A stretch of DNA of 64,000 nucleotides from Podarcis muralis (lineage: Eukaryota). The notes beneath the pieces were generated by a model. It saw nothing but the letters and a program-made list of their open reading frames with translations, was not told the origin of the DNA and searched no databases. The stretch spans positions 29,636,001 to 29,700,000 of the forward strand of contig NC_135655.1 in NCBI RefSeq assembly GCF_964188315.1, read 5' to 3'. The translations under genes and the position numbers were made by a program. Positions 7,599 to 59,947 of the stretch are shown here, in pieces. How positions within the stretch are numbered: position 1 is the stretch's first letter; each line of letters opens with the position of its first letter.

Positions 7599-7827
7599 CA
7601 GTGGTACTTCGGGTTACATACGCTTCAGGTTACAGACTCCGCTAACCCAGAAATAGTACCTCGGGTTAAGAACTTTGCTTCAGGATGAGAACAGAAATCA
7701 TGCTCCAGTGGCGCGGCAGCAGCAGCAGGAGGCCCCATTAGCTAAAGTGGTGCTTCAGGCTAAGAACAGTTTCAGGCTAAGAACGGACCTCCGGAACGAA
7801 TTAAGTACGTAAACCGAGGTACCACTG
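7599..7827 (+). mobile_element. Tc1/mariner (Tigger-like) MITE, CAGTGGTAC-ended, 229 bp
   Basis: TA|CAGTGGTACTTCG ... CGAGGTACCACTG|TA; terminal inverted repeats plus TA duplication; no ORF. Confidence 0.9.
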
Positions 7828-11161: not shown

Positions 11162-11387
11162 CAGTGGTACCTCGGGATAAGTACTTCATTCGTTCCGGAG
11201 GTCCGTACTTAGCCTGAAACTGTTCTTAGCCTGAAGCACCACTTTAGCTAATGGGGCCGCCTGCTGTTGCTGTGCCGCCAGAACACAATTTCTGTTCTCA
11301 TCCTGAAGCAAAGTTCTTAACCTGAAGCACTATTTCTGGGTTAGCAGAGTCTGTAACCTGAAGCGTATGTAACCCGAGGTACCACTG
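11162..11387 (-). mobile_element. Tc1/mariner MITE, same subfamily as 7599-7827, opposite orientation
   Basis: TA|CAGTGGTACCTCG ... CGAGGTACCACTG|TA; the interior is the reverse complement of the 7599 copy. Confidence 0.9.
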
Positions 11388-12049: not shown

Positions 12050-15000
12050 TTAAAACAATCGGGCTCCATAACCAAACGTCTGTTTTATGCCCTCAAAGTA
12101 GTATCGTTGCCAGCCCTCCCTTGTTCTCTCTTCTTCGTTGGCTGGGATGCCCCTTCCTTCCAGGCGGATTTCTGTTTCACCAGCTTTGTCGATGAACGTC
12201 AAAGTGATGGTTGCAAAGTGTCCTAAAAGAGCCAAAGAAAAACCCCAACATTCAGCAGTGTGACACAGCCTGGAGAAACACAGCCAGACAAACTATCTGC
12301 TTCTTTCCTGATATGGTTAAGAGAAGAAATCTGCTCTTCTTCCCAAGATTGCAACAGCTGGGAAACACTCAACTCTTAACCAATCTACCCTTTAAATATG
12401 TCATATCCTGTATGATAGGGCAGATTCCCAGTACAGTGGTACCTCGCAAGACGAATGCCTCGCAAGACAAAAAACTCACTAGACGAAAGGGTTTTTTGTT
12501 TTTTGAGCTGCTTCGCAAGACAAATTTCCCTATGGGCTTGCTTCGGAAGACGGAAACGTCTTGCAAGTTTGTTTCCTTTTTCTTAACACCGTTAATACAG
12601 TTGCGACTTGACTTCGAGGAGCAACTCATAGCACGCGGTGTGGTAGCCTTTTTTGAGGTTTTTAAAGACTTTGGTGATTTTTGAAGCTTTTCCAAAACTT
12701 TCTCGACACCGTGCTTCGCAAGACGAAAAAAATCGCAAGACGACAAAACTCGCGGAACGAATTAATTTCGTCTTGCGAGGCACCACTGTAATAAGTACAG
12801 CCAATGCACGAGTTGCCGTACAAGCCAAGCAAAAACATAGCACAACCAAGGCCAAGGCTAGTAACCAACTGGGAAATGCTTGTGCTTTCAAGCATCTTAC
12901 AATTTAATAATGGGCACCTACTGCTAGTACAACATAGTCAGAGTATAGCTGAAGCATATGTCATTTTCTACTTTGTTATATGAAGTAGAATAACTTACCC
13001 TCTGGCCATGTTTTAAATCTCCACTTCATTGCAATCTGCTTCTCAGGAACCTGGAAAGGAAGGAAAGCCTAGTTATCTAGCAGGTATATTTTCATTTGAA
13101 TACCAAGAGAGTGACAGAGATTATACTGAAAAAAGCTGGGGGGGGTGTCAATATTATGTGAGAGTAGCTCAGGGTCTAAATACATATAACGCTTAATGAG
13201 TAATGTGCAACTACATCTCTTTTTTCTATAATTAACAAGCGCAACAGAGCAACTGTTATCAGAACTGCACTGTGCAAAGAAAGGAGGTTCTATCTGTCTG
13301 TCTGTCTAATTCCTCCACCTCCTTTCCCAGTCCAGGACTCAAGGCAGCTTATGCAGATAAAACAGAAATAGCTAAAAACACAATAAAGACAATCATTTAA
13401 AGGTAATGAAATATAAATAAAATAGTGTTTAAAAGATCCATTAAGAAACAACAACAGCAATAAAAACATCACAAAACCAGCCCTTTCCTCAAAATACCAA
13501 CTCCTATTGTAGAGAGATTTATTGAGATCAAAATGATCTAAGTTTAGCTACAGTTCACCAAGCTTGCCTTCATAACATTTCTTCTCTGAACCAGACATGG
13601 TTCAGAAATAACCACAGTTTAGAAGGATGAAGGTTGCTGTGCATACACTGTCTCCTCCCCTCCCCTCCTGCTCTGTAGTGAATAACCTCCAGGATTTCTT
13701 AAACTGATTACCTGTTACATCTAAACCAGGAAAGCATCATTTTCATTCTGACAGTGCAAAGGGGAAGGAGGAAGGAGCATAAAGGTGCAATGCTTGTGCC
13801 TGCCTAATCAAACTGAGTTTGTTATGTCTGAACTCGGCCAATATTATCCATTTGTTTTTTGGAAAAGATGTGTATTTCCACCTAAACCATCAGCAACACA
13901 AAAGAGTCTATCCAATTTTAGACTTGGTAAGGTAGTACAGGCATTAGCATTATTATTACTATTATCATTATCTGTACAACACCCTTCATCCAAAGATCAC
14001 AGGGCAGTTCGCAACATAAATGTTCAGAGCATTACAAAAGAAACAGATCATGGGCTAAAAAGAAGGCACGTCCCAGCTACTGAGCAACAGAAAATGTATT
14101 GTCAACAGTACTTACTAGTTCAGTGAACTCTCCAGTGACACTGCCGTCTAGCAGCTGGAATTTTCCTCCTTTGTCAGCCTCCAAAAAGGCAGGTGAGTGA
14201 GTAAAAGCCTGGACCATCTGCAGAAAAAAAAAAATTATGATCATTATGCATTAAAATGACCATGACTTCCACCCAATCTACTGAAACAACAGAAACAGAT
14301 GCTTGATTCCAGCACTCTGGAATCTGAGTCCTGATTCCAGTACCATCTCCCACTGGGGACGGGGGCACTTTCAAGGATGAAAGTAGCACCTCTTGGCTGC
14401 CACTTCATTTCCAATTAAGCAGAAGCAAATGCTCATCTCGGTGGGAGCTTCTTTGGAAGTAGGTCTCCTGCTGAAAGAACATATAACCCTTCCAGACTGA
14501 GAAGAAACAAGGTGACCCATAATCCTTGAAATATTTCCTAAAGGCCTAGAGGTCGCTTCTGCTGCAGAGTACCAACCACAACACCCTCTGTGTGTGAGCT
14601 AATAGGAGAAACATGGGGAGGACGTTAGTCTGAACAACCAGCAGAGATATTTATAACCAAATCTAATCTAAAAAGTGTACAAGGACTTCTCGACAGAAAA
14701 GGACCTGTAGACAGACCTGCAACTTACCTCTTGTGTGATAAACACTCTATACAGTTCATCTGGAGATGTTAAGAAAACGTCCTTCAAGTTTATCTTGCAA
14801 GTAGGAATTTTGACTCCTATCGATTTGGATTTAAGTGCATTGCCAGCAACTGGTTCAGTGGTCTAAAAATAGAATAAGTTACAATGAAGAACATATATTA
14901 ACTGATAGCTTATTTTGTTAGTTGATTTACAAACTTTTTTAAAAAAAGAACAGCACTCAAAATACAATCTAAAAATTGTGAAAACAATAGAAACTATATG

Positions 15001-18000
15001 CAATACAAATCAGTACAAGCACAACCTAAAAGCCAGATGCAATCAATATGAAACCAGCATAAAAAGCAAGCAAGCGGGGGTGGGGGTGGGAATTGTATAC
15101 ATGTAAACAGCACTGAGGAATGCAGTGTAACACTATGGCGCTCCCAAGACTCCTAAGCCTTGCTGCACTAGCAGAAATCCTTGGGCAGGCTCCCACTAGC
15201 AGAGCTAGTAGCTGAATCCCGCTCCAGCTGTGAGTTAAAAGACATGGGGAAATAAAAATATCTTCACCTGGTAGCTAAAGGTCCACAACGTAGATGCCAG
15301 GCAAGCCTCTGCTGGGAAAGCATTCCATAAATGGGGTGCCACCAAGGAAAATACTCCCTCCCTTGGCCACTTGCCTCATTTTGCTAGGGGCGGGGGGAGA
15401 TTTGGAGCAAAATAATTAATCCCGAACCCTGCTAATAAGATGGCTCATTCCCTGCAGCTGCTGAAAGAGCAAGGCACCAACCTGCAGCCACTTTTCTTCC
15501 TCACTGGACTCCAGTAGTCCCCAATCTTCAAGATACTGCAATCTGTTTTTGTTATACTCCCTCAAGAATTTTGGTCCAATTGTATGCCACAGAATATTCA
15601 CATTCCTATCAAAACTGCTTAGTGCCCAGAGCTACCTCATATGCCACACCACTAAGTCTGCTGCCACTAGGAGTGTAAAGTAGCCCTGTGCCTTATTATT
15701 CATCAGAGCAAAGAAATGTTAACCTATAAAATACACCTGGAATCTTGGGCTCTTACCTTCCGTTCCTCTGCTTTGCGTACAGGCTGAGGTGGGAGCTCTG
15801 ATTGTTCACCATTCACTGTGGGTAAGATCATGCCTTGGGTAAACTCTGAAAGGTATTAAAATCTCATTATTCCATTCAAAGCATCTAGAAAGAAACCACA
15901 TTTCATAACAATCATAGCTGTAAGAAAGCATCATTAAAGGAAGGCAGGATGTCACAGAAAATGGGATAAGAAAGCTACCACACACTTTGATAAATTTATA
16001 ACACTGGAACTTATCAGTTCAGACCTCCAAGAGGATGTACTGAAAGCTATACAAATGCTTTTGAGAGCAGGAAAGAGGGTCAAACAATAATTACATAATA
16101 CAGTGGTACCCCGCAAGACGAACGCCTCGCAAGACGGAAAACCCGCAAGACGAAAGGGTTTTCCATTTTGGAGGCGCTTCGCAAAACGAATTTCCCTATG
16201 GGCTTCCTTCGCAAGACGAAAGCCCATAGGGAAATCTCCTGGACAGCGGGGAAGCGCAACGCGTCTTCCCCACTGTCCTCGGACCTCCTCCGAAGGCTGG
16301 CGGTGGGGCGGAGAGACCTCCTCCCGCAGCCAGGCTTCGGAAGGCTGTAAAGCAGCCCCCCGCGACCCTCTCCCGGCTGGAGAGGTGACGCGCGCCTATG
16401 GCAGCAGCCTCCATAGCCGAGCGTCACCTCTCCAGCCGGGAGAGCACGCGCGGGGCTAAAGCAGCCCCCCGCGACCCTCTCCCAGGTGACGCGCGCCTAT
16501 GGCAGGAACCTCCATAGGCGCGCGTCACCTCTCCAGCCGGGAGAGCGCGCGCGGGGCTAAAGCAGCCCCCCGCGACCCTCTCCCGGCTGGAGAGGTGACG
16601 CGCGCCTATGGAGGCTCCTGCCATAGGCGCGCGTCACCTCTCCAGCCGGGAGAGCACGCGCGGGGCTAAAGCAGCCCCCCGCGACCCTCTCCCAGGTGAC
16701 GCGCGCCTATGGCAGGAGCCTCCATAGGCGCGCGTCACCTCTCCAGCCGGGAGAGCACGCGCGGGGCTAAAGCAGCCCCCCGTGACCCTCTCCCGGCTGG
16801 AGATGTGACGCGCGCCTATGGAGGCTCCTGCCATAGGCGCGCGTCACCTCTCCAGCCGGGAGAGCGCGCGCGGGGCTAAAGCAGCCCCCCGCGACCCTCT
16901 CCCGGCTGGAGATGTGACGCGCGCCTATGGAGGCTCCTGCCATAGGCGCGCGTCACCTCTCCAGCCGGGAGAGCACGCGCGGGGCTAAAGCAGCCCCCCG
17001 CGACCCTCTCCCAGGTGACGCGCACCTATGGCAGGAGCCTCCATAGGCGCGCGTCACCTCTCCAGCCGGGAGAGGGTCGCGGGGGGCTGCTTTAGCCCCG
17101 CGTGCGCTCTCCCGGCTGGAGAGGTGACGCTCGGCTATGGAGGCTCCTGCCATAGGCGCGCGTCACCTCTCCAGCCGGTAGAGGGTCGCGGGGGGGCTAA
17201 AGCAGCCCCCCGCGACCCTCTCCCAGCTGGAGAAGTGACGCTTGACTATGGCAGCAGCCTCTGAAGGCTGCTCCGAAGCCTGGCGGGGGGGGCGGAGAGA
17301 CCTTCTCCCCGCGCCAGCCTTCGGATGCCTGTCCTGAAGACTTGGGGTGGGAGAAGGGTTTTCCTTCCCACCGCCAACATTCAGAATGCTGTTCTGAATG
17401 TTGGCGGTGGGGAGGAAAAACCCTCCTCCCACGCAAGCCCCGGGAACAGAGGGAAAGCGCTGCGCGCCTTCCCCTCTGTTCCCGTACCTGTCCTGAAGGC
17501 TTGCGGTGGGGAGAAAAGCCCTTCTCCGCACCGCCAGCCTGGCAAGCGGTTTCCATAAGAACGCATTAATTGATTTTCAATGCATTCCTATGGGAAACCA
17601 TGCTTCGCAAGACGAAAAACTCGCAGGAAGAAAAAACTTGCGGAACAAATTAATTTCGTCTTGCGAGGCACCACTGTACTATATTAGAGACATGCAGCCT
17701 AAAGTTTGACTGGTAAACTCAGGGCAGGTATATATAATTTTCAGACCACAACTCCAAGTTCTCTAGTGCAGGCATGCACTACTGTGGCCCACAAGGCTTT
17801 TTTCCCCACAGTGATGTGGTGGCAGTCTCCTTGGTGCTACTTGAGACAAATAATCCATAATAATTACTATCAGCACTGAGATGGAAAATGATAATTCTTC
17901 ACATCCTTGAACGGAGTCTTGCCTCACCAGATTTACTTTGGTAGACCAGCAGAGGATGGAGAAGGTCCTTGAGGTATCACAAGTCCTAAGCCATTTAGTG

Positions 18001-21000
18001 ATAACCAGTACTTTAAACTGCACTCAGAAACACCCTGACAACCAGTGTAGCTGCTACAGTATGGGACTGATATTCTCCCCAAACCTGCTACATGTTAAAA
18101 TTTTAGCAGTGGCATTTTGTACTAGCTGAAGCTTCCAAAGAATCTTCACAGGAAGCCCCACACAGTTTGCTACAGTAATCCAGGCAATATGTACCTAAAG
18201 CCCTACACACTCACTCTCCACCGCTCATGCCAAGGAAAGAGGAGACCAGCCCATTGGTCTCTGGCTGCTTCTGCCATCATTTCTGCAGCCCACCCACTCC
18301 CCATGTTGGGGGCTGCATGTCTTCGGTGGGAAGCCTGCTCTACTCAAATAAGCTCTCCACAAGATTAAGAAGCCTGAAAGATCAGGGTATGAATCATGCA
18401 GGGAGCCTACTCAAATAGAACAGGCTCCTTGCTGCAGACATTCAGCCACCAACATGGTGTTAGGGGGAGTGGTGGGTGCTGCAGAAGGAAACGGTGCCAG
18501 GGGATGCAGGAGACGACAAGGCCAGACTTATTCCCTCTATCCCCTTCAGATGAGGGTTAATTGCAGGACAAGGGGAGAACAGGGATTAAGATGTATGACA
18601 AAGATAGACAAGTTTATTCTAAGCAAACTATTTCTAACAGATTTCAAAACTCCTTCGTCCTCCACAAGAACAGCTTTGACTCGACTATTTATTATACGCC
18701 TCTGTACTTACCTGTTTTGAGAGTGCTAATGTAAGTTTCCAAAGCACTGCTGATCTGATTTACACCTTCATGCTTCATCAGAGCTAGCAGGTTGGTGTCT
18801 GGCTCATCTTTGGCAAGACTAACGCTGATCTGAGAAGAAAAGGGGGGGGCAGGAATTCATATGGTTCCAACAGGACAAATCTCTTTTCACTGCACATACT
18901 CCTCCACCCTGTAATGCATCCATGCGGTAGCTTTTTGTAGATTTGAATGGTAGAAATCAGATATGAACTAATGGGGCTTAAAAATAATAAAAAGCTGAAG
19001 AGAGATAAAACTTGGGACTACTTGGATATCTGATCCCTCTTCAACGAAGCAGAAATCAGGAAAATAATCTGTAACTGTGTTCTTACCTCAATTTCATCAA
19101 CATCATTTTCATCCGATAGATTGGGAATCTCCACATATCCCTTATACTTCACACCTGTATTTGAAGTGCCTGTGAAAAGCAATATACTGAATGAATTGCT
19201 CAATTTCCCTTTCTAACAGCAACTTCTGACATGTTCTGGCATTCTAGAAAACTCTCTAAATTCCCTTTCTCTCTTCCCTTGGAGAAGGGGGTTGTTATCT
19301 GCTTCCTAACTATTTGAAAAGACTGTAGAAATTCTGCTTTTTGACAATTCAACCAGCACTCTACAGCAAGATCACATTACGTAGCTAAAAACAAAGCAGG
19401 AAAACTCACCTGTCCAAGTCAGCTTGATATTCCACTCATAGAAGAAAATCAGCTTTCCTTTGCGGTTATTGATTGAGGCTTCTCCATCCAATTTACTCAC
19501 TTCTGTCACTTCACAAGTTCCCTCTGCATTCTCTGCTCTAATAGCCAGAAGCAAACTTTTCAGTTTCTCTGAAGACCAGTTAGATGCATCTCTTTCAGTC
19601 CTAAGAAAAGAAAAAAATTCTCAAAATGTAAAAGGCAGTAATGAACAGCTGGTGCTTTTCAATGCTCCAGTGTTGCAAAGTTAGTTTCCAATGCATTGCA
19701 TACACCCCCTTTGTCCCATTCCCTAGAAACACATGGTATTTGGCTATACATCCTGAAAAGTTACACTTCCAAAACTGACTTCTTTTAGGGACACATGGAA
19801 GAGGGTAACCAAGGGTTTTGACTAACCACTCTGTATACCTCTACACCAGCGGTGGTGAACTGGATTTGGCCAGTGGGTCAGATTGCTATCTTTCCCACCT
19901 CTAGTGGGCTAAGCTTGACAGGTGGGCAGAACCACAAAGTTGTCGATCACCTGACATCAGATTACCTTTTCTGCTTGCAAGGGTCTTTGCATATCACTTC
20001 ACAAGACAGCACTTTGAAAGGGGCTTCTCATGACCCGCCAATTGCTGAGGCTTGCTAACACCCTTTCAAAGCACTGCACAATATAGTGCTTTGAAAGGGG
20101 CTTCTGAAGTGCTGTCTATTTGAAGCACTTCACACTGAGCTTTTCAGTTGCTAACAAACTCCCTTTTGGCTAAGCCAGGTTTCTACCTGCTCCACACCTG
20201 ATGTCATATGATGTTAGGTGTAGGGCAGTTGGGTATAGCTTGGACAAAATAGCCTTTTTACTTAATTCCCACCACTCAGCAATTAACCAATTATGTCCAA
20301 TATACATCTATATACATCTATAAAGGAGGGCTCCAACCATGACTAAGAACCCATACCACCTATTTAACCTTGGCTGATCAATTTCCTCAGCCCCATTCTG
20401 AATCTGTTACTTTACTTCAGCAGGATTATGAACCAGGAACAGCTAGACAACATAAGAGTTAGGTCCATTGGGATCCATTCAACGTCACACTCTTCTGGTT
20501 GTTCCATTAGTGCAAGCATTCCTGCTTGTCAGACAGAGCAATCCCCCCTCTCCTTCCCCCATGCACTGTTCTGGGGGTTCTCCTGACCCTCCAGAATGGA
20601 CTGGGTGTGGGGGGGGGGGCAAGGCCTCATTGCACTAGCAAGAGCTCTGCTGGTGCACAGGGCTAGCTGAATCCAGGCCACTTTAATTAATGTGCATGAA
20701 TAACTAAGTGCACTAATTTCAAAGTATAACTTAGTTATCCAGTCCTATGCTTCTAATACAATAGGATGGCTCAAGCTTGAGTTATACAAGAGTCATCACA
20801 TATTGAGCTTACACAGCCCCAAAACTTCCTTCTTAACTCTTAACTTCCTAGCTCTGGTGCAAGCAAAGCATATTGTTGAAGCTCTCACTAGTAAATCTGT
20901 CTAGTAAATTTCAGGCGTGGCCAAACTTGGCTCTCCAGCTGTTTTGGGACTACAATTCCCATCATCCCTGACCACTGGTCCTGTTAGCTAGGGATGATGC

Positions 21001-24000
21001 AAGTTGTAGTTCCAAAACAGCTGGAGGGCCAAGTTTGGCCACGCCTGCATCTAGTTAGACACAGACTGTCTGCTGCTGTGGAACCTACCTTTTTATTTCA
21101 TTTAAAAATTATATTTTTTGGTAAAACAATCTGGCAACATGAGAATGGCATCATACACACGCTTAATGAGTAGTCCAATCCCAGCAGGTTCCTATATTTC
21201 AATGAAAGAACAGGATGTACAGTTCTAGCCAACCCACAGGATTATTTTGAACCACTAGGTGGACGGACGGAGTGAACTCACAAACTGCTGAGATCATAGC
21301 TGTTAAATCTACCCAGCAGAGAAGTAACTTGTGACATGACAGAGACAGATTATACAAACAGATTTCCCCTTTCCCGCTCCTTAAAATACAAGAACTAAAT
21401 TCCAATACATCAGGCTTCTGCTTTGAAAACCAATCTAGATAAAATGTTTCTGTAGAATCTGCATGTAAAAACAAAGAGTGCTTCATAAGTTGAAGATGGC
21501 TATATGTTTCACAGTTGCTTGAGTGCTGCTGCATTAGCATTACATACCCTTGGAAACTACAGCTTGCTCACCACTGCAGAATGAGCTGCTGGCTCACTTC
21601 ATACTGCCTATGTCACTGTTTTTTCTTTTTGGCTCCGCACCCCCCAAGGTTGGGGCAGGAGGACAGAAGAAACTGCTGCTAACTGGAGAGCTCTCCATGG
21701 TTCTAGAGAAGCACACACACCTTCCTCGGATATGAATTAACCATGATGCTCAAAGAGACAGTGCATATTTCCCCTGTGGTTTAATTTAACTGGCAAGTTC
21801 CCAGAACAGGGAACCTACAGTATTTATCCTTCCTCCTTTAAAGCCTCCTGCAGCTGAAAAAATAGCAGCTGCTCACTCATCACAAATTAAGAGCATGGTG
21901 ATCATGTTTCTAGTTGTCTAAAGATGCAGAAGAGCCTGGATAAGGAGCAAAACTGATTGGACTGAAAATCTCAGGAACAGGAAAGACCTGGTAGATATAG
22001 TCACAAAAGGGTAGGACTGGACTTCTTTATACTAATCCTGAAAGCTGTGGGTTGCTACTAGGGATGGAAGAAGATACGGTTTTCTGTTTCACCCTGTATT
22101 TAACGCATGCAGCATTTTCTCCATTCTGCTGCAGTTCATCTTCTGCCAAAACTTACATTATTTGTCTCACTGTGCGCTGTGGTAAAATTATGTAACTTGC
22201 ATATTATAATTACACTGTTGTTACTTTATCCCACCCCATTCATTTCTATGCAAAGGAAACACAATGCAAATGTGGGGTGGTGGTGGCATAATCGATTACG
22301 TACAATTTGCAGGTGGAAAGCAACAGCAAACACTGGTCATATTTGCCAGATTGATATGCATTAAAGACATGAGGCAAATAAGCAAACACTAGCAACTTCT
22401 ACTTGGGTTCATCAGAGGTCTCCAGCATCCCTAAGCGGCTGTTCACAAGAGTCCATACCATAATAAATCAAGATGTAAAGTGCCATTGGCACTTGGTCTT
22501 TGCACTGCTGGCAAAATGCCATATTTACACAAGCCACACTGTGCACAGCAGCTGCTTGAAAATATTGTGCATAGTTCACTCCTTGCCCAGGTCAGTAAGT
22601 GTGGTGGCAATCGCATGAAAAGATTTTCAATAAGAAACAAAAAATAGAACGCTATACATAATAGTAGATGTACATGACCAAGTGACAATATGAAGGCATC
22701 CTGCATCTCCAGGTTTTTCTGGTTCATTTCTATTGGAATAGAAAAATGACTTTCTTACAGCAGCACACAAAAATTATTCTAGTTTTATAATAGTATTATA
22801 ATAATAGTTTATTATTTATACCCTGTCCATCTGGCTGGGTTTCCCCAGCACTCTGTCTCCAATAGTGACTACTGAAAATACATGATGTGATAGCAACAGC
22901 CACCCTCTCTGCTATCAGTGTCCTGCACTCAGGAATACTGCTTCTGTGTTTGGAAGCTCCATTTATATCAAAATTGTTGTCAAATCACCCATGAATTTGT
23001 ATGTGGCAGAATTGCTAGTTTGCTTAAGACAACTTGCGTCACCATTTTTCAAATTAAGACTGATTCCTATCTTGTCATCATTAATTCCACATTAAGGAAG
23101 CAATGAATGAAATCCTCCCCCATTCTCAAAATGCTCCTGGAACAGTTTCCCTGGATACCACCACTTCCTGTCTACCCACTTTCTCCACAACTACCACACT
23201 GCAAATCAGTGTGAAAAGCAATCAGATACAGCAACCCAGCTAAACAAAAAGCATGGCTTTGCATGTCAGAAACACAGTAAGCACAAACGCACCATTAAAA
23301 ATGACAAGGGGCTTCCTATTCTGGAGAGTGCTTCTGCAGCACCAGATTATGATACAGGTGGAGGGGCTGCCTCCCTGTTGCAAACTACTTTTATTCAGCA
23401 GGCACTCGCTGGCTTTGCCAGATGCTGCACCTGGCCCCTAGAAAAGACTGCCAACGTTTTTGTTTGTTTTAACCAGTCCCCAGCTCCCATGCACTTAAGC
23501 GCAGCTTGATCTGAAAGAAGTAGCTAGCGATCATATTTCTTTTTCCATGCCAAAAAGCACCCAAACTCTCACTAGCTGCCCTTCTACAGATCTAGCTGTT
23601 TTGGTTTTTTTAAAGGAGGTTAAACCAGGCCAGGGAGGTTTCTCTATCTCTCCTCACCCCTGTAATCTTTTACCACACTTATTTGAGAGTAAGGTCCACC
23701 GAACCCGAAGGGAAGTGACTCCGGCGCGAACACGCATAAGCGGTGGAGAATCTAGTGTGAAGGGGTCAGAGGCAAGAGACAGGGAGAGAGAAGCAGACAC
23801 GCGTCCCCGCAACCGCGGGGGTGTGGGTGGTTGTGGGTGTGGCGGTGGCAGCACGGCCGCCCTTATTCCCCCAAAGCCCTCAGGGGAAGAGCTGCACACC
23901 CCCCCCAAACACGAGCCACTTCTCCTCCGCCCCCCCCAGCCCCCGCTGCCTTCCCGGCCCCCCTCGCCCACCAGTGCCAGTTGTTGACGTTGGTGGCATC

Positions 24001-24051
24001 CGCGCGCTGCTCCACAATCCAGCGCGGATCTCCCTCTCCCCACTTGGCCAT
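12050..24051 (-). CDS. AHSA1: Activator of Hsp90 ATPase 1 (Aha1), complete CDS, 340 aa
   Basis: Exons (minus): 24051-23972, 19600-19410, 19169-19087, 18829-18712, 15845-15757, 14862-14728, 14217-14116, 13050-12999, 12222-12050. Total 1023 nt, all GT-AG, open frame MAKWGEGDPRWIVEQRADATNVNNWHWTERDAS...WQRYYFEGIKQTFGYGARLF*. Carries the NxNNWHW motif and the C-terminal AHSA1/START-like domain. Confidence 0.98.
12434..12788 (+). mobile_element. Tc1/mariner non-autonomous element, CGCAAGACG subfamily, 355 bp (AHSA1 intron 8)
   Basis: TA|CAGTGGTACCTCG ... CGAGGCACCACTG|TA; repeated subterminal CGCAAGACGA motif; about 120 bp left end and about 80 bp right end shared with the 16101 and 28380 copies. 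Confidence 0.9.
16101..17676 (+). mobile_element. Tc1/mariner non-autonomous element, CGCAAGACG subfamily, 1576 bp, with internal palindromic array (AHSA1 intron 4)
   Basis: TA|CAGTGGTACCCCG ... CGAGGCACCACTG|TA; same ends as the 12434 and 28380 copies; no transposase ORF. Confidence 0.92.
16348..17262. repeat. GC/CpG-rich palindromic minisatellite, units of 109 and 101 bp, about 8.5 copies
   Basis: TAAAGCAG unit starts at 16348, 16457, 16558, 16667, 16768, 16877, 16986, an inverted copy near 17087, and 17198. Each long unit contains a 34-bp inverted repeat around a 9-nt loop. Confidence 0.95.
20912..21047. mobile_element. hAT-type palindromic MITE, 136 bp
   Basis: Perfect TIR CAGGCGTGGCCAAACTT / AAGTTTGGCCACGCCTG; same core as 1087 and 36362; no clear target duplication. 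Confidence 0.8.
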
Positions 24052-26010
24052 CAGCGCCTCGCCGAAGGACTCGCCGCTTCTGCCTCTGCCCGGCTGGCTG
24101 GCTGGCTGGCGAGCGCCCGTCGCCCTCGCTCTCTCGCCGCGCGTCTGGAAGCTACTAGAAGCGCCGCCGGCAGCCGCGCCGCCTCCCAGCTTCCGGCAGC
24201 CGCCGGAGAGCTTCCTTCCGTTGCTCCCCGCCGCCGCCGCTCCTTACTCCCCCAGTACCATAGAGGGTATAAGCGTAACACACAGACACGCGCAGCCTGG
24301 GCAGGGGAGGAAACTGACATGAACACCGAGGGAAGCGGGAGGCACGTTATTGGGGCAGAGTGCATAGACGTAAAAGCAGAGTCTATATGTTGCCTGCCTC
24401 GCTTCTGGGTGCCGCCCTCCTTCTCCTGGAGCAAAAGTGACAGCTCGCTGTGGCAAATCCAGGATTTGAAGCGAAGCCGTGAATTGGCCAGCGGCCGAGT
24501 GTCCACCAGAAACAAAAGCGAGCGGCCTCTCGACAGGCTCTTTCCTACTCAGACCTGTTTTCGCGTGGGAATTAAGTGTTTAAAGACTTGAAGCCGCATC
24601 TACGCCGTCTAAGTGAGCGTCGGGTTGGGGCTGGGGGGGGGTCTAGAATTTCATAATCTCTGCCGGGAAGCATAGCTGTCAACGTTTCCCTTTTTTAAAG
24701 GGAAATTCCTTTATTCCGAATAGGATTCCTCGCAAGAAAAGGGGAAAGTTGACAGCTATGCTGGGAAGTGTCGCTCTATTTTTGGAGAAAATCCAGCTTC
24801 CTTTAACTGAAAGGGAGGAAGTTCACCGCGGAAGTGAAGGACTGCGGTGGTGTGTAACTCTTCGTTTTAATCTCTGCAACTCAGCCTGTGAGGCACGTAA
24901 AGGCCTCGAGAGACACAGGTTCGGACTGGCCTCCCACTGCCATGTCGACGTTCCTTGGCGTGTTTCACCTTGGAGATGCCAAGAGACAGGGAGACGCCGC
25001 CTGCCTGCCGGCATTCATCCATCCCTAACGCTGGGCTTCTTTGGACTACAACTCCCGTCATCCTTGGCTGGGGCTGATGGGAGTTGCAGTGCAAAACCAC
25101 TGAGGGGGTGGGGCAAAGGTTTCCCGCCACGGCGCTGCGGCGTTCGATCCAATGCCCGGGCTGTGTGCGTAGGCTTAACATTTGCGCGCCACTTTAACCT
25201 TTCCTTACTTCTGTGGCTCCTCCCTGCTTCTGGTTCCTCGCCTTGCCCCTTGTCTGGGCCGGAGCCCTTTCACTCCTAACCTAACGAAGCAACACAGCCC
25301 TTTTCAAAAGAAGCGGCGCGTAAACGGAGTTTTGCCTCCGCCCATGACCCGTAGTGACAGAAGCGGAGCGGGGGAGGAAGGAGAGCGAGAAAGGCTCGGC
25401 GCTGAGGGCAGCCCGGCTTCCTGCCTGGGAAGCGCGGCACAGCCTCTCCCGATGTAAAGCGTCGGCCTGAGAAACGCCGCCGCGCTGCGCTCTGTAGTCG
25501 AAACCGATGGCTGGGGAACCAGCTGGAAAACTACCTCTCCCGTGATGCTTTTCGAAAGCAACCGCCTTTCTCTTTCCCTGCCTGAGGAGCCGAGGAACAC
25601 GGCCCGCAGAAGGGCGCAGGGCCCAGCGCCGAGCATGGACGGGGGACCTGCGTGGTGCTGATCGGATCCCTGCCCGGCTGGTCGTCGCTCCCCGCCCTGG
25701 AGGCCCTGCTTCTCCGAGGGTAGGCGGCTGTCTTCTCCCTCCGTCGCGGGAACGGGGTCTCCGGCGCTTCCTCTGGCGGGGGGCTTTCTGAGCGAGGAGG
25801 CGCAAGACCGTGTCCTGAGGCAAGTGGAGATGCACCGGGCTCCTGCTTTCTGCCTCGCCCCTTCCTGGCGCTTGGGCTTGGCCAGAAGAGGTCCCAGCCG
25901 GTTATCTCATGCCCACCCCCACCCCGCGCCAGCAACATTGGCTGCTGCTATTTATACGGGGTCATGGACACCGGGATCTTCCGCCCCTGGGGACGCTGCC
26001 GCCTGAGGCA
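23790..26010. promoter_or_regulatory. CpG island and bidirectional promoter of AHSA1 and VIPAS39
   Basis: Dense CpG/GC region covering AHSA1 exon 1 and the upstream interval. Contains an HSE-like element (24142-24161), GGGAAATTCC (24700-24709) and CGGAAGT (about 24829). Candidate VIPAS39 non-coding exon donors are TAA|GTGAGC (24613) and AGG|GTAGGC (25720); which is used cannot be determined from sequence. Confidence 0.85.
24142..24161 (-). promoter_or_regulatory. Heat shock element (HSF1 site) candidate upstream of AHSA1
   Basis: Minus strand cTTCtaGTAgcTTCcaGACg: four alternating nGAAn units, two perfect and two with one mismatch, about 90-110 nt upstream of the ATG. Aha1 is a known heat-inducible co-chaperone. 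Confidence 0.6.
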
Positions 26011-26403
26011 GTCGCCTCACTTTGCTTCATGGGTGGGACGGCTCTGGTCACCCGTGTTGCCTGCTGCTGCCTTACATTCTAGCATAGGCGTCTCTCTCTA
26101 ACCCTTTTCTCTCTTTCTCTCTAATGAGATTGTAGTCTAATATAGGCAGAGAAGCAAGTAATGGAGGAGACGCAATGAAAAGAAAGGTTGGGTGGAATGG
26201 ACTTGCATGTTTCTTAAAGTCATGTTGCAGTGGAAACTTATGGGGAGGATGGGGCTACTGCCCCCCCCCCCAGCTGTGGAGGCCAGTCCACCCAATGCCA
26301 ATGGGGCAGTGCTCCAGCAGCATCAGTCCAGCCTTAGACAGCTGCCAGCCTATTTGCCTTCTTGCTTATATTCAGTCCAGGGAGTGGCGCTTCCTGTCAG
26401 CTT

Positions 26404-26426
26404 CCTCCTCCTCCTCCTCCTCCTCA
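26404..26426 (+). repeat. (CCT)n microsatellite
   Basis: Read directly. Confidence 0.85.
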
Positions 26427-27370
26427 TAGAACTGAGCAAGGAAGAGCAGGAAGGAGACGAAACTAGAATGGGTTGGCTCTACCTCACACTGATCTTGGTG
26501 TGATGGGCTGTTGGCCTCCTTGACTTCTGCCTTGCCAGCTGCAATGGGCACCATTCACCACTCTCTCTCCCACTAAGTGGTGGGAAGTTAAGGCCAAATA
26601 TCACAAATGCAGATTTGCTTGCAGATTTGTTCTGGCAGCAGGTGTAGGATTGCCTCCTGTGTCATTTCGAGTGGTGTGTTTTTAAACATGCCCTATTGGT
26701 CAGATCGATCAGTTGCTCAGTGAAAGACAATAAGCTTCAGAGTGAGCCAGTAAAAATAGATCAGCTGTACCTTGAAGCTGTACTGATTTCTAGCCCTCCA
26801 TGAATTTAGAGCTATTGTATGCAAATATTTGATTCAGGATTATTAAACTGTGGCATCAAGAAAACAATTGTAGTGTCTCTGAGGTTACTCTTGATGCCAG
26901 TTTTGGCCACACTTCTATGGCTGGTAAATCCGCTTTGCTTTACTTAAAATTAACAGCACAAACTGAGGAGCACTTCTCAAGACACTTCCTAGGCAAAGTG
27001 CCACTGAGAACTTAACCAGACTTTAAAAAAATAAACCTATAATTGATCTGGTACCATCATTACACAGTCTTTGCTTTTCCTTATCTGTTTGCTACGTCCT
27101 AAGTTTATTTTGCATATTCCCTGATGGTCAATGCATTTTTGAAAAAACAAAACAAAACAGAAGACCTATGGTGTGGGTCTCTTTCTGAGGAGTTTGAACA
27201 AATGCAGTTGTATTGTAGGACTTGGCTGTAGTCAATGGATTATGTGATGTGCTCTGGGTGGAAACTGGAAGCATGTAGATATGGGTCATGGATAGTGTGG
27301 TGGTCAGGGATTATTTCTTAATTGACCAAAGGTAATATATATGCAGTAAAGAAAAAAGTCTTATTTTCAG

Positions 27371-30300
27371 ATGAACAGAATAAAGGTTGATGAGGAAGAA
27401 TACTGGCACAGTTCCAAGTGTAAAGCATTTACGTTTGATGATGAAGATGATGAGCTCTTTCAGGTACAGTTCCTAGTCAGAACAAACTGAGAATGCACTA
27501 TGCAGTGTCTCCTTGCCTGAAATGTTAAGGAAAGCAGAAATCTGCATATAGTGTAGTCATTTTAAAATTATTGATAGATATCTTTCCATTGAAGGAATTG
27601 TGAAAGTAAAATTGAGGAATTGCTATACAGTGGTACCTTGGGTTACGTTACCTTTGGGTAACGTAATTTCGAGTTACAAATGCGGCAAACCCAGAAATAT
27701 ATACTTCCGGGTTTCGCCGCATCCACAGAAGCGGCGCCTCCGCATGCGGACTTTTCGGGGTAAGTACGGACCCTGGGACAAATTAAGTTCGTATCTGGAG
27801 GATGCACTGTATTTATATGAGCAGGAAGTATCATGCATGATTGAATGTGTACACTTCACAAGATATGTGGCACAGAACTGGGATTCCTGATCATCTCATT
27901 CTTCACTCATTAGCAGAACACGTTTCTAGCCCTTGTGGTTGTGAAGATGTGCTTGAAAGTGAGCTTGCATCTGCAGGTTCAGAAAATTGGTGTTGTGCAG
28001 AAGCATATTTCCCTACATCATAGCCTCCAATAGTCCTTACTCCAGATATATATTTTAGTCTTTTCTTGCCACATCATTTTTTCAAAGACCTATTTTCCTG
28101 CTACTAAATTGTTCCCTGCCAAACCATTTTAATGTCTTATAAAAGTTGAAAAATGGGTACCCAATAAAGCAACGTAATAGTGCTGCAGGGCAAATAGGCC
28201 TTATTTTAAATGAGGTGTGAACTTGTCATATAACATTCTTTCACAATTTGCATCTGGTATATAAGGATTTGTTTGACTTTTTGTGGGTGGCATGTGTCTA
28301 TAAAACTTTTATCTACATTTTGAAATGAGTATTTTAGATTTTAAAAACTATTTAGAGGTCTTTTGTTGAGTAAGTGGTACAGTGGTACCCCGCAAGACGA
28401 ACGCCTCGCGAGACGAAAAACTCGCAAAACGAAAGGTTTTTTTCGTTTTCGAGTTGCCTCGCAAGACGAATTTCCCTATGGGCTTGCTTCGCAAAACGAA
28501 GCTTGCCCCGGGGACAGCGGGTCTTCTCTTTTGAAGCAAGGGGCGGCGGGGAGATCGCTTCTCCCCACCGCCCCTTGCTTCAAAAGAGGTCTGCCCCCGG
28601 ACCTCTTTTGAAGCAAGGGGCTGCGGGGAGATCGCTTCTCCCGGTGCTCCGAAGCGGGGTGGGGGGGGCGGGAACACCTGCCCCAGCCGCCGGGCTTCGT
28701 AGCGCTGCTGCGAAGCCGGGCGGGGGGCGGGAACACCTGCCCCAGCCACCCCGCTTCGGAACGCTGCTCCGAAGCGGGGTGGGGGGGGCGGGAACACCTG
28801 CCCCAGCCGCCGGGCTTCGTAGCGCTGCTGCGAAGCCGGGCGGGGGGCGGGAACACCTGCCCCAGCCACCCCGCTTCGGAACGCTGCTCCGAAGCGGGGT
28901 GGGGGGGGCGGGAACACCTGCCCCAGCCGCCGGGCTTTGTAGCGCTGCTGCGAAGCCGGGCGGGGGGCGGGAACACCTGCCCCAGCCACCCCGCTTCGGA
29001 ACGCTGCTCCGAAGCGGGGTGGGGGGGGCGGGAACACCTGCCCCAGCCGCCGGGCTTCGTAGCGCTGCTGCGAAGCCGGGCGGGGGGCGGGAACACCTGC
29101 CCCAGCCACCCCGCTTCGGAACGCTGCTCCGAAGCGAGGTGGGGGGGGGCGGGAACACTTGCCCCAGCCACCGGGCTTCGTAGCGCTGCTGCGAAGCCGG
29201 GCGGGGGGCGGGAACACCTGCCCCAGCCACCCCGCTTCGGAACGCTGCTCCGAAGTGGGGTGGGGGGGGCGGGAACACTTGCCCCAGCCACCGGGCTTCG
29301 TAGCGCTGCTGCGAAGCCGGGCGGGGGGCGGGAACACCTGCCCCAGCCACCCCGCTTCGGAACGCTGCTCCGAAGCGGGGTGGGGGGGGCGGGAACACTT
29401 GCCCCAGCCACCGGGCTTCGTAGCGCTGGTGCGAAGCTGGGCGGGGGGGGGGGCGGGAACACCTTCTGAAGGCGGGCGGGGGGCGAAAGTCTTTGTCCCC
29501 CCTGCCTGCCTTCCCAGGGGCTTTTAAATCGCCCCGGACAGCGGAGAACTCCTCCGCTGTCCCGGGGCGATTTTAAAATGCCGCCCGCCAGCATTTTAAG
29601 ATCGCCCGGACAGCGGAGAAGTCCTCCGCTGTCCCAGGGTTTTTTAAAATGCTGGGGGTGGGAAGAAAAGCCCTTGTCCCCCCCCCCCCCAGCCTTCAGA
29701 AGAGGTCCGGGGACAGTCTGTCCCCGGACCTGGTCTGAAGGCGGTTTCCCTAGGAACGCATTACTTGATTTTCAATGCATTCCTATGGGAAACCGTGCAT
29801 CGCAAGACGAAAAAACCGCAAGACGAAGAGACTTGCGGAACGAATTAATTTCGTCTTGCGAGGCACCACTGTATATAAATTTTGATGGATAAATAAATTC
29901 AGCTTGTGCACAAACATAGAATACATCTGTTCTTGGGATACCGGTTCTTTAGAATGAAAGTGTACAGTCTATCTGGATGGAATAGGGCTTGCCTTCATTT
30001 TCACTTTGGTTTTGTTCATAGCTGAAGGAGTCAAAACGAACAGTGAACAGCCTCCGAGATATTGTAGATGATGACGATGATCTTGAGAAGTTCAGCTGGA
30101 GTGGGGAGCCTGTGGGCAGTAAGTGGAGCAGAATGTTTTTGCATCTATCACCCATTCTTTGAATCTGAATTTGATTATTGCTGCCCTCTGTCAAGAAAAA
30201 TCTCATTAGAGCTACACCTACTAGGAAATATGGCCTAGTGAGGTTTAGTATGCTTAATGTTGAGCAGGAAAAGTGTCTAATAGTTTCATACATTACCACA

Positions 30301-56506: not shown

Positions 56507-56731
56507 CAGTCAAACCTCAGATCCCAAACACCTCCATTTTGGAATGTTTCGGCTCTCGAACAAAGAAAACCCAGAAGTAAATGCTCCAGTTTTCAAATGT
56601 TTTTCAGAAGCCGTATGTCCAATGTGGCTTCTACTTGAGTGCAGGAAGCTCCTGCAGCAAATTGGAAGCCACACCTCAGTTATTGAACAGGCTTCCGGAA
56701 CAGATTGCGTTCGTCAACCGAGGCTTGACTG
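56507..56731 (+). mobile_element. Tc1/mariner MITE, CAGTCAAACC-ended, second copy
   Basis: TA|CAGTCAAACCTC ... GAGGCTTGACTG|TA; the interior aligns by eye with 9277-9516. Confidence 0.8.
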
Positions 56732-57282
56732 TACTGCTAATGTGCTGCACTAAGCTAAACCATGGTTTGGCTCATTGATCCCTGGGCTCATGGTTTTGTT
56801 CTCTCCACACTAACCACAAGCTTTAAGATTTGCTCTAAGATTTACAGTTTATGGTTTGCCCAGGGTACCTAAACCATAAGCTTGTGTTTGGATGATATTA
56901 TAAGTCAGACCATGTCTTAGCTCAGTGCAGTAGCAGAAAGAGGACCAAATCATATGCAATCTCCTCTCCAGGAGCCTCCACACACTTGTACGCACACTTG
57001 GGCTAAGCAATGGTTTAGGGTTAGGCTGTTGTGTGAATCAGGCCAATGTGAGCCCTCACAAAGAGCAAGGAAAAGACCTTAAGATAAACTCCAGTAAGAA
57101 CACTCTCCTGTGTTTCTGTGTGCTGTTTCTGTGTTGACACCACAGCTGCATGACTGTCCTCTTTGCCATGTTTAGGATTAGGCTGCAGAAAAGCACATCT
57201 CTGTTTGCTCTGCAACCACTAGTCCAACTAGCTGCTCAGTGAATGGGGACCACACCCAACTTGATAGTGTTAAAAAACCCAA

Positions 57283-57301: not shown

Positions 57302-59895
<2,594 letters not shown>

Positions 59896-59912
59896 GTCCC
59901 CTGCCAGCCCCG

Positions 59913-59947
59913 AGCAGCGGCAGCAGCAGCAGCAGCAGCAGCAGCAA
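59913..59947 (+). repeat. (CAG)n tract, read as (CUG)n in the SAMD15 5' UTR
   Basis: gcagcggcagcagcagcagcagcagcagcagcaac, about 20 nt upstream of the SAMD15 ATG. Confidence 0.9.

What the first reader, a model, noticed from the sequence alone, without database searches (positions are those of the whole stretch)
12434..29871. A transposon chassis with swappable hairpin cargo: one MITE family, three different interiors
Seen: elements at 12434-12788 (355 bp), 16101-17676 (1576 bp) and 28380-29871 (1492 bp) share TA TSDs, CAGTGGTACC TIRs and about 120/80-130 bp ends with repeated CGCAAGACGA motifs, yet their interiors differ. In the two long copies nearly every module is a hairpin: GGACAGCGG..CCGCTGTCC at 29536 and 29608 (related at 16241), 28526-28588, and 17366-17420. 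A different module is amplified in each. The GCTCCGAAGC..GGGGGCGG..ACC module appears about twice in the 16101 copy (16286, 17270) but 14 times in the 28380 copy. Known: MITEs carrying tandem repeats occur in some taxa, e.g. Xenopus. Inference: a mobile minisatellite generator that seeds copy-specific, CpG-rich, structure-forming arrays into introns of housekeeping genes; I know of no description of it in lizards.
Basis: partly seen in the sequence, partly recalled or inferred. Interest (0 to 1): 0.78.

Follow-up and report, generated by a model that had tools for sequence, protein, structure and literature searches.

The report
Tigger-type lizard MITE with hairpin arrays
Three copies of one small non-coding cut-and-paste transposon sit in introns of two lizard housekeeping genes, and each of the two long copies has expanded a different GC-rich palindromic repeat between the same conserved ends; this is real, but it is a known kind of repeat-carrying transposon, here seen in a lizard.

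Summary
Three same-strand elements (355, 1576 and 1492 bp) share TA duplications, a 22-bp terminal inverted repeat, about 120-bp and 84-131-bp ends, and repeated CGCAAGACGA motifs. Both long copies are packed with significant DNA palindromes. One carries a 914-bp array of a 101/109-bp double palindrome. The other carries 13.4 copies of a 60-bp hairpin, arranged as a 120-bp dimer.

The "swappable cargo" reading is only partly supported. The two long interiors share the same two hairpin module classes (homology above all 200 shuffles). They therefore look like one long form that expanded different resident repeats. Only the 914-bp array and the short copy's 149-bp core have no detectable relative in the window.

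The terminal repeat matches published Tigger (pogo superfamily) termini. It does not match the CCGTA termini listed for Passer in lacertids.

CpG is undepleted (o/e 0.6-2.0 against 0.14-0.27 in flanking introns), so the copies are young or unmethylated.

MITEs that carry tandem repeats are already described (Xenopus miDNA4 and Xstir, bivalve pearl/DTC84). This scan has also reported the same kind on other DNA of this genome (s1-152707, s1-179025).

No genome-wide copies or reads could be examined. The verdict is a new member of a known kind, of modest interest.

The parts
12434..12788 (+). Copy A, the short form (355 bp), with TA at 12432-12433 and 12789-12790. It lies in the last intron of AHSA1, about 220 bp from the last coding exon.
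12434..12555 (+). A 5' end: 22-bp TIR plus direct repeats of the CGCAAGACGA motif
12556..12704 (+). A interior: 149 bp, 40% GC, not palindromic (z -0.1), with no detectable relative elsewhere in the window
12705..12788 (+). A 3' end (84 bp shared with B and C), including the right TIR
16101..17676 (+). Copy B, a long form (1576 bp), with TA at 16099-16100 and 17677-17678. It lies in an internal AHSA1 intron.
16101..16221 (+). B 5' end
16222..16347 (+). B left hairpin modules: a palindrome built on the end motif, one GGACAGCGG-type hairpin and one GAAG..GGCGG-type hairpin
16348..17261 (+). B-specific array: about 8 units of a double palindrome in a 101-bp and a 109-bp variant, forming 210/319-bp higher-order repeats. 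71% GC, CpG o/e 0.88. No relative elsewhere in the window.
17262..17545 (+). B right hairpin modules: four GAAG..GGCGG-type units and one GGAACAGAGG-type hairpin, homologous to modules of C
17546..17676 (+). B 3' end (131 bp, 91% identical to C), which itself forms two hairpins
28380..29871 (+). Copy C, a long form (1492 bp), with TA at 28378-28379 and 29872-29873. It lies in the intron after the first coding exon of the + strand gene.
28380..28499 (+). C 5' end
28500..28644 (+). C left hairpin modules: a long hairpin at 28526-28588 nested in a GGACAGCGG-type arm, plus a partial duplicate
28645..29452 (+). C-specific array: 6.7 x 120 bp, which is 13.4 x 60-bp GAAG..GGCGG-type hairpin units in two alternating variants. 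The first four 120-bp units differ by 0-1 bases. 76% GC, 14 GC boxes, 7 G-quadruplex motifs.
29453..29740 (+). C right hairpin modules, including the GGACAGCGG hairpins at 29536 and 29608; homologous to modules of B
29741..29871 (+). C 3' end

Best explanation
These are three copies of one non-autonomous Tigger-type (pogo superfamily) cut-and-paste transposon family of a lacertid lizard.

Shown: each copy has a TA duplication, a 22-bp terminal inverted repeat, and conserved ends that carry five (5') and two to three (3') direct copies of CGCAAGACGA(A).

Inferred: a Tigger transposase encoded elsewhere binds the terminal repeat and these subterminal repeats and moves the elements.

Shown: the two long copies share an interior made of two classes of GC-rich palindromic modules of about 40-60 bp.

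Inferred: palindromic, near-identical neighbouring units fold back during replication or repair. They therefore gain and lose units by slippage, unequal exchange and template switching. One lineage expanded a resident 60-bp hairpin into a 120-bp dimer array. The other expanded a 101/109-bp double palindrome. The short copy is a different subfamily or a gap-repair deletion derivative.

The arrays are by-products of this instability and travel with the element. Nothing here shows a function. High CpG and near-identical array units indicate that the copies, or at least the arrays, are young.
For: Structure: termini, TA duplications and shared ends. The motif is confined to the elements, 21 hits against 1.2 expected. 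All three copies share the same left/right asymmetry at TIR position 8 (A on the left, G on the right), so they descend from one lineage.

Family: published tables list autonomous Tigger elements whose TIR has the same first 13 bases and ACGAA at the same offset, in a scorpion. A close variant is listed in a turtle. The scorpion element also repeats its inner TIR motif subterminally. A Tigger-like MITE of Rhodnius has the same first 13 bases. Two further MITE families in the window, at 7599-7827, 11162-11387, 27628-27809 and 56507-56733, have Tigger-type CAGT..CCTC termini and a shared GGAAC motif near the 3' end.

Shared long form: arms of both hairpin classes occur as inverted pairs in both B and C. 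B and C interiors are similar beyond all 200 shuffles.

DNA-level palindromes: the modules fold equally well on both strands (z -7.4 to -13.5 on the minus strand). No Rfam family matches.

Youth: the first four 120-bp units of C differ by 0-1 bases. CpG o/e is 0.6-2.0 in every part, against 0.14-0.27 in the neighbouring introns. The ends of the copies nevertheless differ by 8-15%, which suggests diverged source lineages rather than long residence.

Known kind: PMC3879986, PMC9659126, PMC12628747.
Against: No autonomous partner was seen, so the Tigger assignment rests on termini alone. No other genomic copy, orthologous empty site or read could be examined. The timing of array growth (before or after insertion), array-length polymorphism and copy number are therefore all untested. 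The 914-bp array of B and the 149-bp core of A have no detectable relative in the window, so capture from elsewhere is not excluded for those two parts. High CpG could reflect absence of methylation rather than youth. An earlier follow-up in this scan named a similar element Passer rather than Tigger.
Confidence: 0.7

Rival explanations
1. True cargo capture (Pack-TIR-like). The conserved ends repeatedly pick up unrelated genomic segments during gap repair, and these segments then expand. On this view the interiors are acquired, not inherited.
For: The double-palindrome array of B and the core of A have no similarity to any other part of the three elements or to the rest of the window. Each copy shows its own palindrome right at the inner edge of the 5' end, which is the kind of junction that template switching leaves. 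First-reader notes elsewhere in this genome propose Pack-TIR-like Tigger MITEs (s1-189849, s1-152877; unchecked).
Against: B and C share both hairpin classes and are significantly similar. The 372-aa frame across the C interior has no protein relatives. No host-gene fragment was seen. A 64-kb window cannot show a donor locus.
Confidence: 0.12
2. Functional mobile CpG islands or structured elements. The arrays are kept unmethylated and act as promoters, insulators, replication barriers, or sources of hairpin RNA in the host introns.
For: The interiors meet the sequence criteria for CpG islands (over 1.2 kb, 69-71% GC, o/e 0.74-0.81). Their values resemble the real promoter island at 23.5-26 kb (o/e 0.79). 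C has 14 GC boxes and 7 G-quadruplex motifs. The hairpins are very stable.
Against: Both strands fold equally well and the stems are near-perfect Watson-Crick pairs, as expected for DNA palindromes and not for a selected RNA. No Rfam match was found. The arrays differ between copies, which argues against a conserved role. Youth alone explains the retained CpG. No expression or methylation data could be obtained.
Confidence: 0.08
3. The family belongs to Passer or another non-Tigger pogo or Tc1/mariner lineage, as an earlier follow-up in this scan stated for a similar hairpin-packed element.
For: Follow-up s1-152707 named a similar element Passer. Termini alone do not prove which transposase acts on an element.
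Against: The published Passer tables give CCGTA termini for Podarcis muralis, Lacerta, Zootoca and Anolis. This family starts with CAGTGGTACC, like the catalogued Tigger elements.
Confidence: 0.07
4. The arrays are assembly artefacts, that is, collapsed or inflated repeats.
For: Palindromic GC-rich arrays are hard to assemble, and no reads could be laid.
Against: The arrays have ordered unit variants, partial edge units and unique junctions to flanking modules. Intact TIRs and TA duplications bound each element.
Confidence: 0.03

Closest known systems
miDNA4, a Tc1/mariner-type MITE of Xenopus tropicalis that carries a satellite (Scalvenzi and Pollet 2014, as summarised in PMC9659126 and PMC12628747)
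   Same: It is a vertebrate, TA-target, non-autonomous element. Its internal repeat exists as a single unit or as arrays of variable copy number between conserved ends.
   Different: It has one repeat type, flanked by AT-rich microhomologies. Here there are at least three GC-rich palindromic unit types, and different ones expand in different copies. The termini here are Tigger-type.
Xmix MITE / Xstir tandem repeats of Xenopus laevis (Hikosaka and Kawahara 2004, via PMC12628747)
   Same: Tandem repeats ride on a MITE, and the published growth model rests on stem-loop formation during replication.
   Different: Xstir arrays are built from the MITE itself and become free satellite arrays. Here the arrays stay inside intact elements in the copies seen.
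pearl / DTC84 / CvA elements of bivalves and DINE-1-like elements of insects (PMC3879986)
   Same: [quoted passage not shown] Core repeats of related elements share little similarity. A palindrome in the repeat is proposed as the hotspot for changes in array length. Every copy differs.
   Different: Those elements have AA target duplications and are probably Helitron-related, with about 160-bp units and a microsatellite tail. Here the elements have a TA target and Tigger-type TIRs, and the units are whole palindromes of 40-110 bp.
Tigger-like MITEs (for example Rhodnius MITE_109, PMC4678618) and autonomous Tigger elements with CAGTGGTACCTCG termini (PMC7386202, PMC9219625 tables)
   Same: They have TA duplications. 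The first 13 TIR bases are identical, and 18 of 22 match the scorpion Tigger TIR. The scorpion element also has direct subterminal repeats of the inner TIR motif.
   Different: Those MITEs are 300-650 bp with no internal arrays reported. No lacertid Tigger is listed in those tables.
Tetris foldback transposon of Drosophila virilis (PMC4079207)
   Same: It is a DNA transposon whose internal repeats give rise to tandem arrays.
   Different: In Tetris the repeats lie in long terminal inverted repeats. Here the TIR is 22 bp and the arrays are central.

Membership tests
Tigger family (pogo superfamily), non-autonomous derivative | TA target-site duplication | tested here: met
   TA flanks both ends of all three copies.
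Tigger family (pogo superfamily), non-autonomous derivative | Short TIR (about 17-26 bp) that starts with CAGT and resembles catalogued Tigger termini | tested here: met
   The TIR is 22 bp. Its first 13 bases and the ACGAA at positions 18-22 equal the scorpion Tigger TIR in the published tables. The turtle Tigger TIR is similar.
Tigger family (pogo superfamily), non-autonomous derivative | An autonomous partner in the same genome with the same termini, encoding a CENP-B_N/HTH_Tnp_Tc5 + DDE_1 transposase | not testable with these tools
   No transposase is present in the window. No lizard genome collection was on hand. First-reader note s1-188970 reports an autonomous pogo element 34 Mb away, unchecked.
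Passer family (pogo superfamily) | Termini CCGTA/CCGTA, as listed for Passer in Podarcis muralis, Lacerta, Zootoca and Anolis | tested here: not met
   The termini here are CAGTGG..., against the Passer tables.
MITE (strict sense) | Small size (up to a few hundred bp), no coding capacity, TIR and TSD | tested here: inconclusive
   Copy A (355 bp) fits. B and C (about 1.5 kb) exceed the usual size and are better called non-autonomous elements. The frames across the arrays are repeat-encoded, and the 372-aa frame has no relatives.
MITE (strict sense) | High copy number in the genome | not testable with these tools
   Only three copies are visible in 64 kb. Earlier follow-ups report hundreds to thousands for similar elements (s1-179025), unchecked here.
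Tandem-repeat-containing MITE | A tandem array enclosed by intact TIRs and TSD, with unit number differing between copies | tested here: met
   Arrays lie at 16348-17261 and 28645-29452, inside intact elements. The 60-bp hairpin is present as single diverged units in B and as 13.4 units in C.
Tandem-repeat-containing MITE | The same arrays recur in other genomic copies, or vary in length between individuals | not testable with these tools
Pack-TIR / gene-fragment-carrying transposon | An interior derived from a host gene or other identifiable donor locus | tested here: not met
   No protein relatives were found for the interior frame. The array of B and the core of A have no similarity elsewhere in the window. 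A donor outside the window cannot be excluded.
CpG island | Length over 200 bp, GC over 50%, CpG o/e over 0.6 | tested here: met
   The B interior is 1324 bp, 69% GC, o/e 0.81. The C interior is 1241 bp, 71% GC, o/e 0.74.
CpG island | Unmethylated in the germline, or promoter activity | not testable with these tools
   No methylation or RNA data could be reached.

The most novel reading that the evidence does not exclude
The long form is a mobile CpG island. It is a Tigger-borne block of GC boxes and palindromes that escapes germline methylation. Each transposition or repair event reshapes its hairpin array, so the family delivers new, copy-specific, promoter- or insulator-like and replication-stalling sequence into introns of broadly expressed genes. 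This would be a lineage-specific source of orphan CpG islands in lacertids.
Probability: 0.1. Interest if true: 0.6.

Novelty: new member of a known kind. Interest (0 to 1): 0.3.

Why it matters
If the family is as abundant and young as the earlier notes suggest, it offers a convenient vertebrate case for watching minisatellites arise inside a DNA transposon. It has identifiable unit variants, palindrome-driven rearrangement, and possibly polymorphic insertions in introns of genes such as AHSA1. It also matters for annotation. CpG-island callers and hairpin or ncRNA finders will flag these interiors in lizard genomes, and they should be masked as transposon sequence. It does not change what is known about how such elements work.

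Tried and rejected
Polymorphism, array length, expression and depth-based copy number remain untested.

3. Other copies by DNA pattern. The TIR pattern gave 0 hits in viral contigs and 0 in metagenome contigs. These collections are not expected to hold lizard DNA.

4. Other copies through a repeat-encoded ORF. The search for homologous proteins with the 372-aa frame across C gave no hit.

5. The search of earlier findings by sequence with the C and B units returned nothing.

6. Rfam at gathering scores on 7000-31000 gave no family.

7. The Passer assignment from an earlier follow-up was rejected for this family, because published Passer termini are CCGTA.

8. A recurrent 'shufflon-like' loop flip in B is unlikely. 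Apart from the edge unit at 16395, loop orientation goes strictly with the 101-bp or 109-bp unit variant at all six other loops listed. Few flip events followed by higher-order amplification are enough.

9. Literature search by sequence strings and by lizard or lacertid terms found no description of this family.

10. The + strand gene. Its exon pieces match VIPAS39 only from my recall. Pfam and PDB searches of the pieces were blank.

11. Spliced models. AHSA1 exons were searched one by one by reference and were never joined.


Full report
**What is there**

The window holds three copies of one element family on the same strand:
- A at 12434-12788 (355 bp)
- B at 16101-17676 (1576 bp)
- C at 28380-29871 (1492 bp)

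The 22-nt terminus occurs exactly six times, as the two ends of each copy, against none expected. Each copy is flanked by TA on both sides. In all three copies the left terminus has A at position 8 and the right terminus has G, so the asymmetry is inherited from one lineage.

The 5' ends align over about 120 bp at 85-88% identity. The 3' ends align over 84 bp in all three copies and over 131 bp between B and C, at 89-92%. The motif CGCAAGACGA occurs 21 times against 1.2 expected, and only inside the elements. There are about five direct copies in each 5' end, two or three in each 3' end, and one inverted copy in the right terminus. A profile search finds no further copy of the family in the window.

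**Interiors**

- **A** has a 149-bp, 40% GC core. It is not palindromic (z -0.1) and has no relative elsewhere in the window.
- **B and C** have GC-rich interiors (69% and 71% GC) made of palindromes. Every module folded as single-stranded DNA beats its shuffles (z -3.1 to -12.5). It does so equally on the opposite strand (z -7.4 to -13.5). These are therefore DNA palindromes and not strand-specific RNA structures. No Rfam family matches.
- **B array.** B carries a 914-bp array at 16348-17261, with periods 109/210/319 and 86-92% matches.
- **C array.** C carries an 808-bp array at 28645-29452, with 6.7 units of 120 bp at 98% matches, which is 13.4 units of 60 bp. The first four 120-bp units of C differ by 0-1 bases.

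**Are the interiors really different?**

Only in part. Two hairpin classes occur in both long copies. One has arms like GAAGGCTGGCGGTGGGG, found as inverted pairs about 30 bp apart. The other has arms like CCGGGGACAGCGG.

The non-array interiors of B and C are similar beyond every one of 200 dinucleotide shuffles. The best score is 43.6 bits, against a shuffle mean of 21.2 and a maximum of 28.8. Summed scores are 1821, against 837 +/- 151.

The unit that C expanded is the same class that sits in B as at least five single, diverged units. B and C are therefore best read as descendants of one long form that expanded different resident repeats. They are not the same ends loaded with unrelated cargo. 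The double-palindrome unit of B and the core of A are the exceptions, because nothing in the window resembles them.

**Family**

Published tables of autonomous pogo-superfamily elements list Tigger elements whose TIR shares the first 13 bases, and the ACGAA at positions 18-22, with this family. The scorpion example also repeats its inner TIR motif subterminally, the same layout as here. A turtle Tigger TIR is close. A Tigger-like MITE of Rhodnius has the same first 13 bases.

The same group's Passer tables give CCGTA termini for Podarcis muralis, Lacerta, Zootoca and Anolis. I therefore file this family as Tigger-type. I do not adopt the 'Passer' label that an earlier follow-up of this scan gave to a similar element (s1-152707).

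The assignment rests on termini only. No transposase is in the window and no lizard genome could be searched.

**Age**

The intronic background has CpG o/e of 0.14-0.27. Every part of every copy has 0.6-2.0. The ends of the copies nevertheless differ from each other by 8-15%, and only about a fifth to a third of those differences are CpG transitions.

The simplest reading is recent insertion from already diverged source lineages, with very recent growth or homogenisation of the C array. Lack of methylation is the alternative, and I could not test it.

**Context**

AHSA1 lies on the minus strand. Its first coding exon is near 24.0 kb, further exons lie at 19.4 and 19.1 kb, and the last coding exon is at 12053 to about 12215. 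The evidence is Pfam Aha1_N (E 8e-23) and AHSA1 (E 5e-9), plus a PDB match to human AHSA1 (E 7e-32). The exons were searched one by one by reference and were not joined.

A and B are therefore intronic in AHSA1. C lies after the first coding exon (27350-27487) of the divergent + strand gene. I recognise that gene as VIPAS39-like from recall only, because Pfam and PDB were blank.

**Mechanism**

Shown: the architecture, the palindromes, the shared modules, the differential arrays and the undepleted CpG.

Inferred:
- The elements are mobilised in trans by a Tigger transposase that binds the TIR and the subterminal repeats.
- Arrays grow by fold-back-promoted slippage, unequal exchange and template switching.
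- A is a deletion derivative or a separate subfamily.

Published models for repeat growth inside MITEs invoke the same stem-loop and microhomology processes (PMC12628747). Conserved flanks acting as a 'cassette' for variable core repeats is the stated conclusion for DTC84 (PMC3879986).

**Novelty**

MITEs that carry tandem repeats are known in vertebrates (Xenopus miDNA4 and Xmix/Xstir; PMC9659126) and in invertebrates. I found no paper describing this in lizards.

This scan has already reported the same kind on other DNA of this genome. Follow-ups s1-152707 and s1-179025 called those copies young, probably polymorphic members of abundant repeat-breeding transposons. I could not check those claims. 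The verdict is a new member of a known kind.

**Limits**

- Pattern scans of viral and metagenome contigs were blank, as was a protein search with a repeat-encoded frame.
- Copy number, polymorphism, the timing of array growth, methylation and expression all remain open.

Noticed in passing
window 7599-7827 (+), 11162-11387 (-), 27628-27809 (+): This is a second MITE family of about 180-230 bp with TA flanks. It has the same first 13 TIR bases (CAGTGGTACCTCG) and a GGAACGAATTAA-like motif near the 3' end, but different subterminal repeats (TTCAGG(T/C)TAAGAAC). It is probably served by a related Tigger transposase.
   Followed up: partly
window 56507-56733: This is a third Tigger-like MITE of about 225 bp with TA flanks. 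Its termini are CAGTCAAACCTC.. and ..GAGGCTTGACTG, and it has a CCGGAAC motif near the 3' end.
   Followed up: no
window 16348-17261: In the array of B, the loop of the first palindrome occurs in both orientations. Apart from the edge unit at 16395, orientation goes strictly with the unit variant at all six other loops listed: the 101-bp units have one orientation and the 109-bp units the other. One second-palindrome loop, at 17081, is also flipped. The last 180 bp or so (17013-17195) is an inverted copy of earlier units (183-nt arms, 92% complementary).
   Followed up: partly
window 28645-29452: The two alternating 60-bp half-units of the array of C have swapped arms. The 5' arm of one pairs perfectly with the 3' arm of the next, so the 120-bp unit folds as one long hairpin (-57 kcal/mol, z -9.0). 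The last three units carry a linked variant pair (CACTTG and CCACCGGG), which gives a 361-bp higher-order period.
   Followed up: partly
window 23500-26000: A CpG island (60% GC, o/e 0.79) lies between the AHSA1 start (minus strand, ATG near 24051) and the + strand gene whose first coding exon is at 27350-27487. It is a likely bidirectional promoter, matching the AHSA1/VIPAS39 head-to-head pair that I recall from human 14q24.
   Followed up: partly
window 20898-21061: This is a palindromic element of about 165 bp (72-nt arms, 85% complementary, 20-nt loop) in AHSA1 intron 1. It looks like a foldback-type MITE of another family.
   Followed up: no
window 59161-59946: A second CpG island (62% GC) holds a 244-aa minus-strand frame with a weak, sub-threshold partial SAM-domain match (E 0.001). 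It also has trinucleotide runs, (TCG)n at 59729-59805 and (AGC)n at 59913-59946. It is probably the first exon of a SAM-domain gene.
   Followed up: no
window 12541-12570 and 16190-16238: Each copy has its own small palindrome exactly where the conserved 5' end meets the interior. In A the last CGGAAGACG motif is followed by its inverted copy. In B the TTTCCCTATGGGCTT segment is followed by its inverted copy. These may be footprints of template switching during repair.
   Followed up: no
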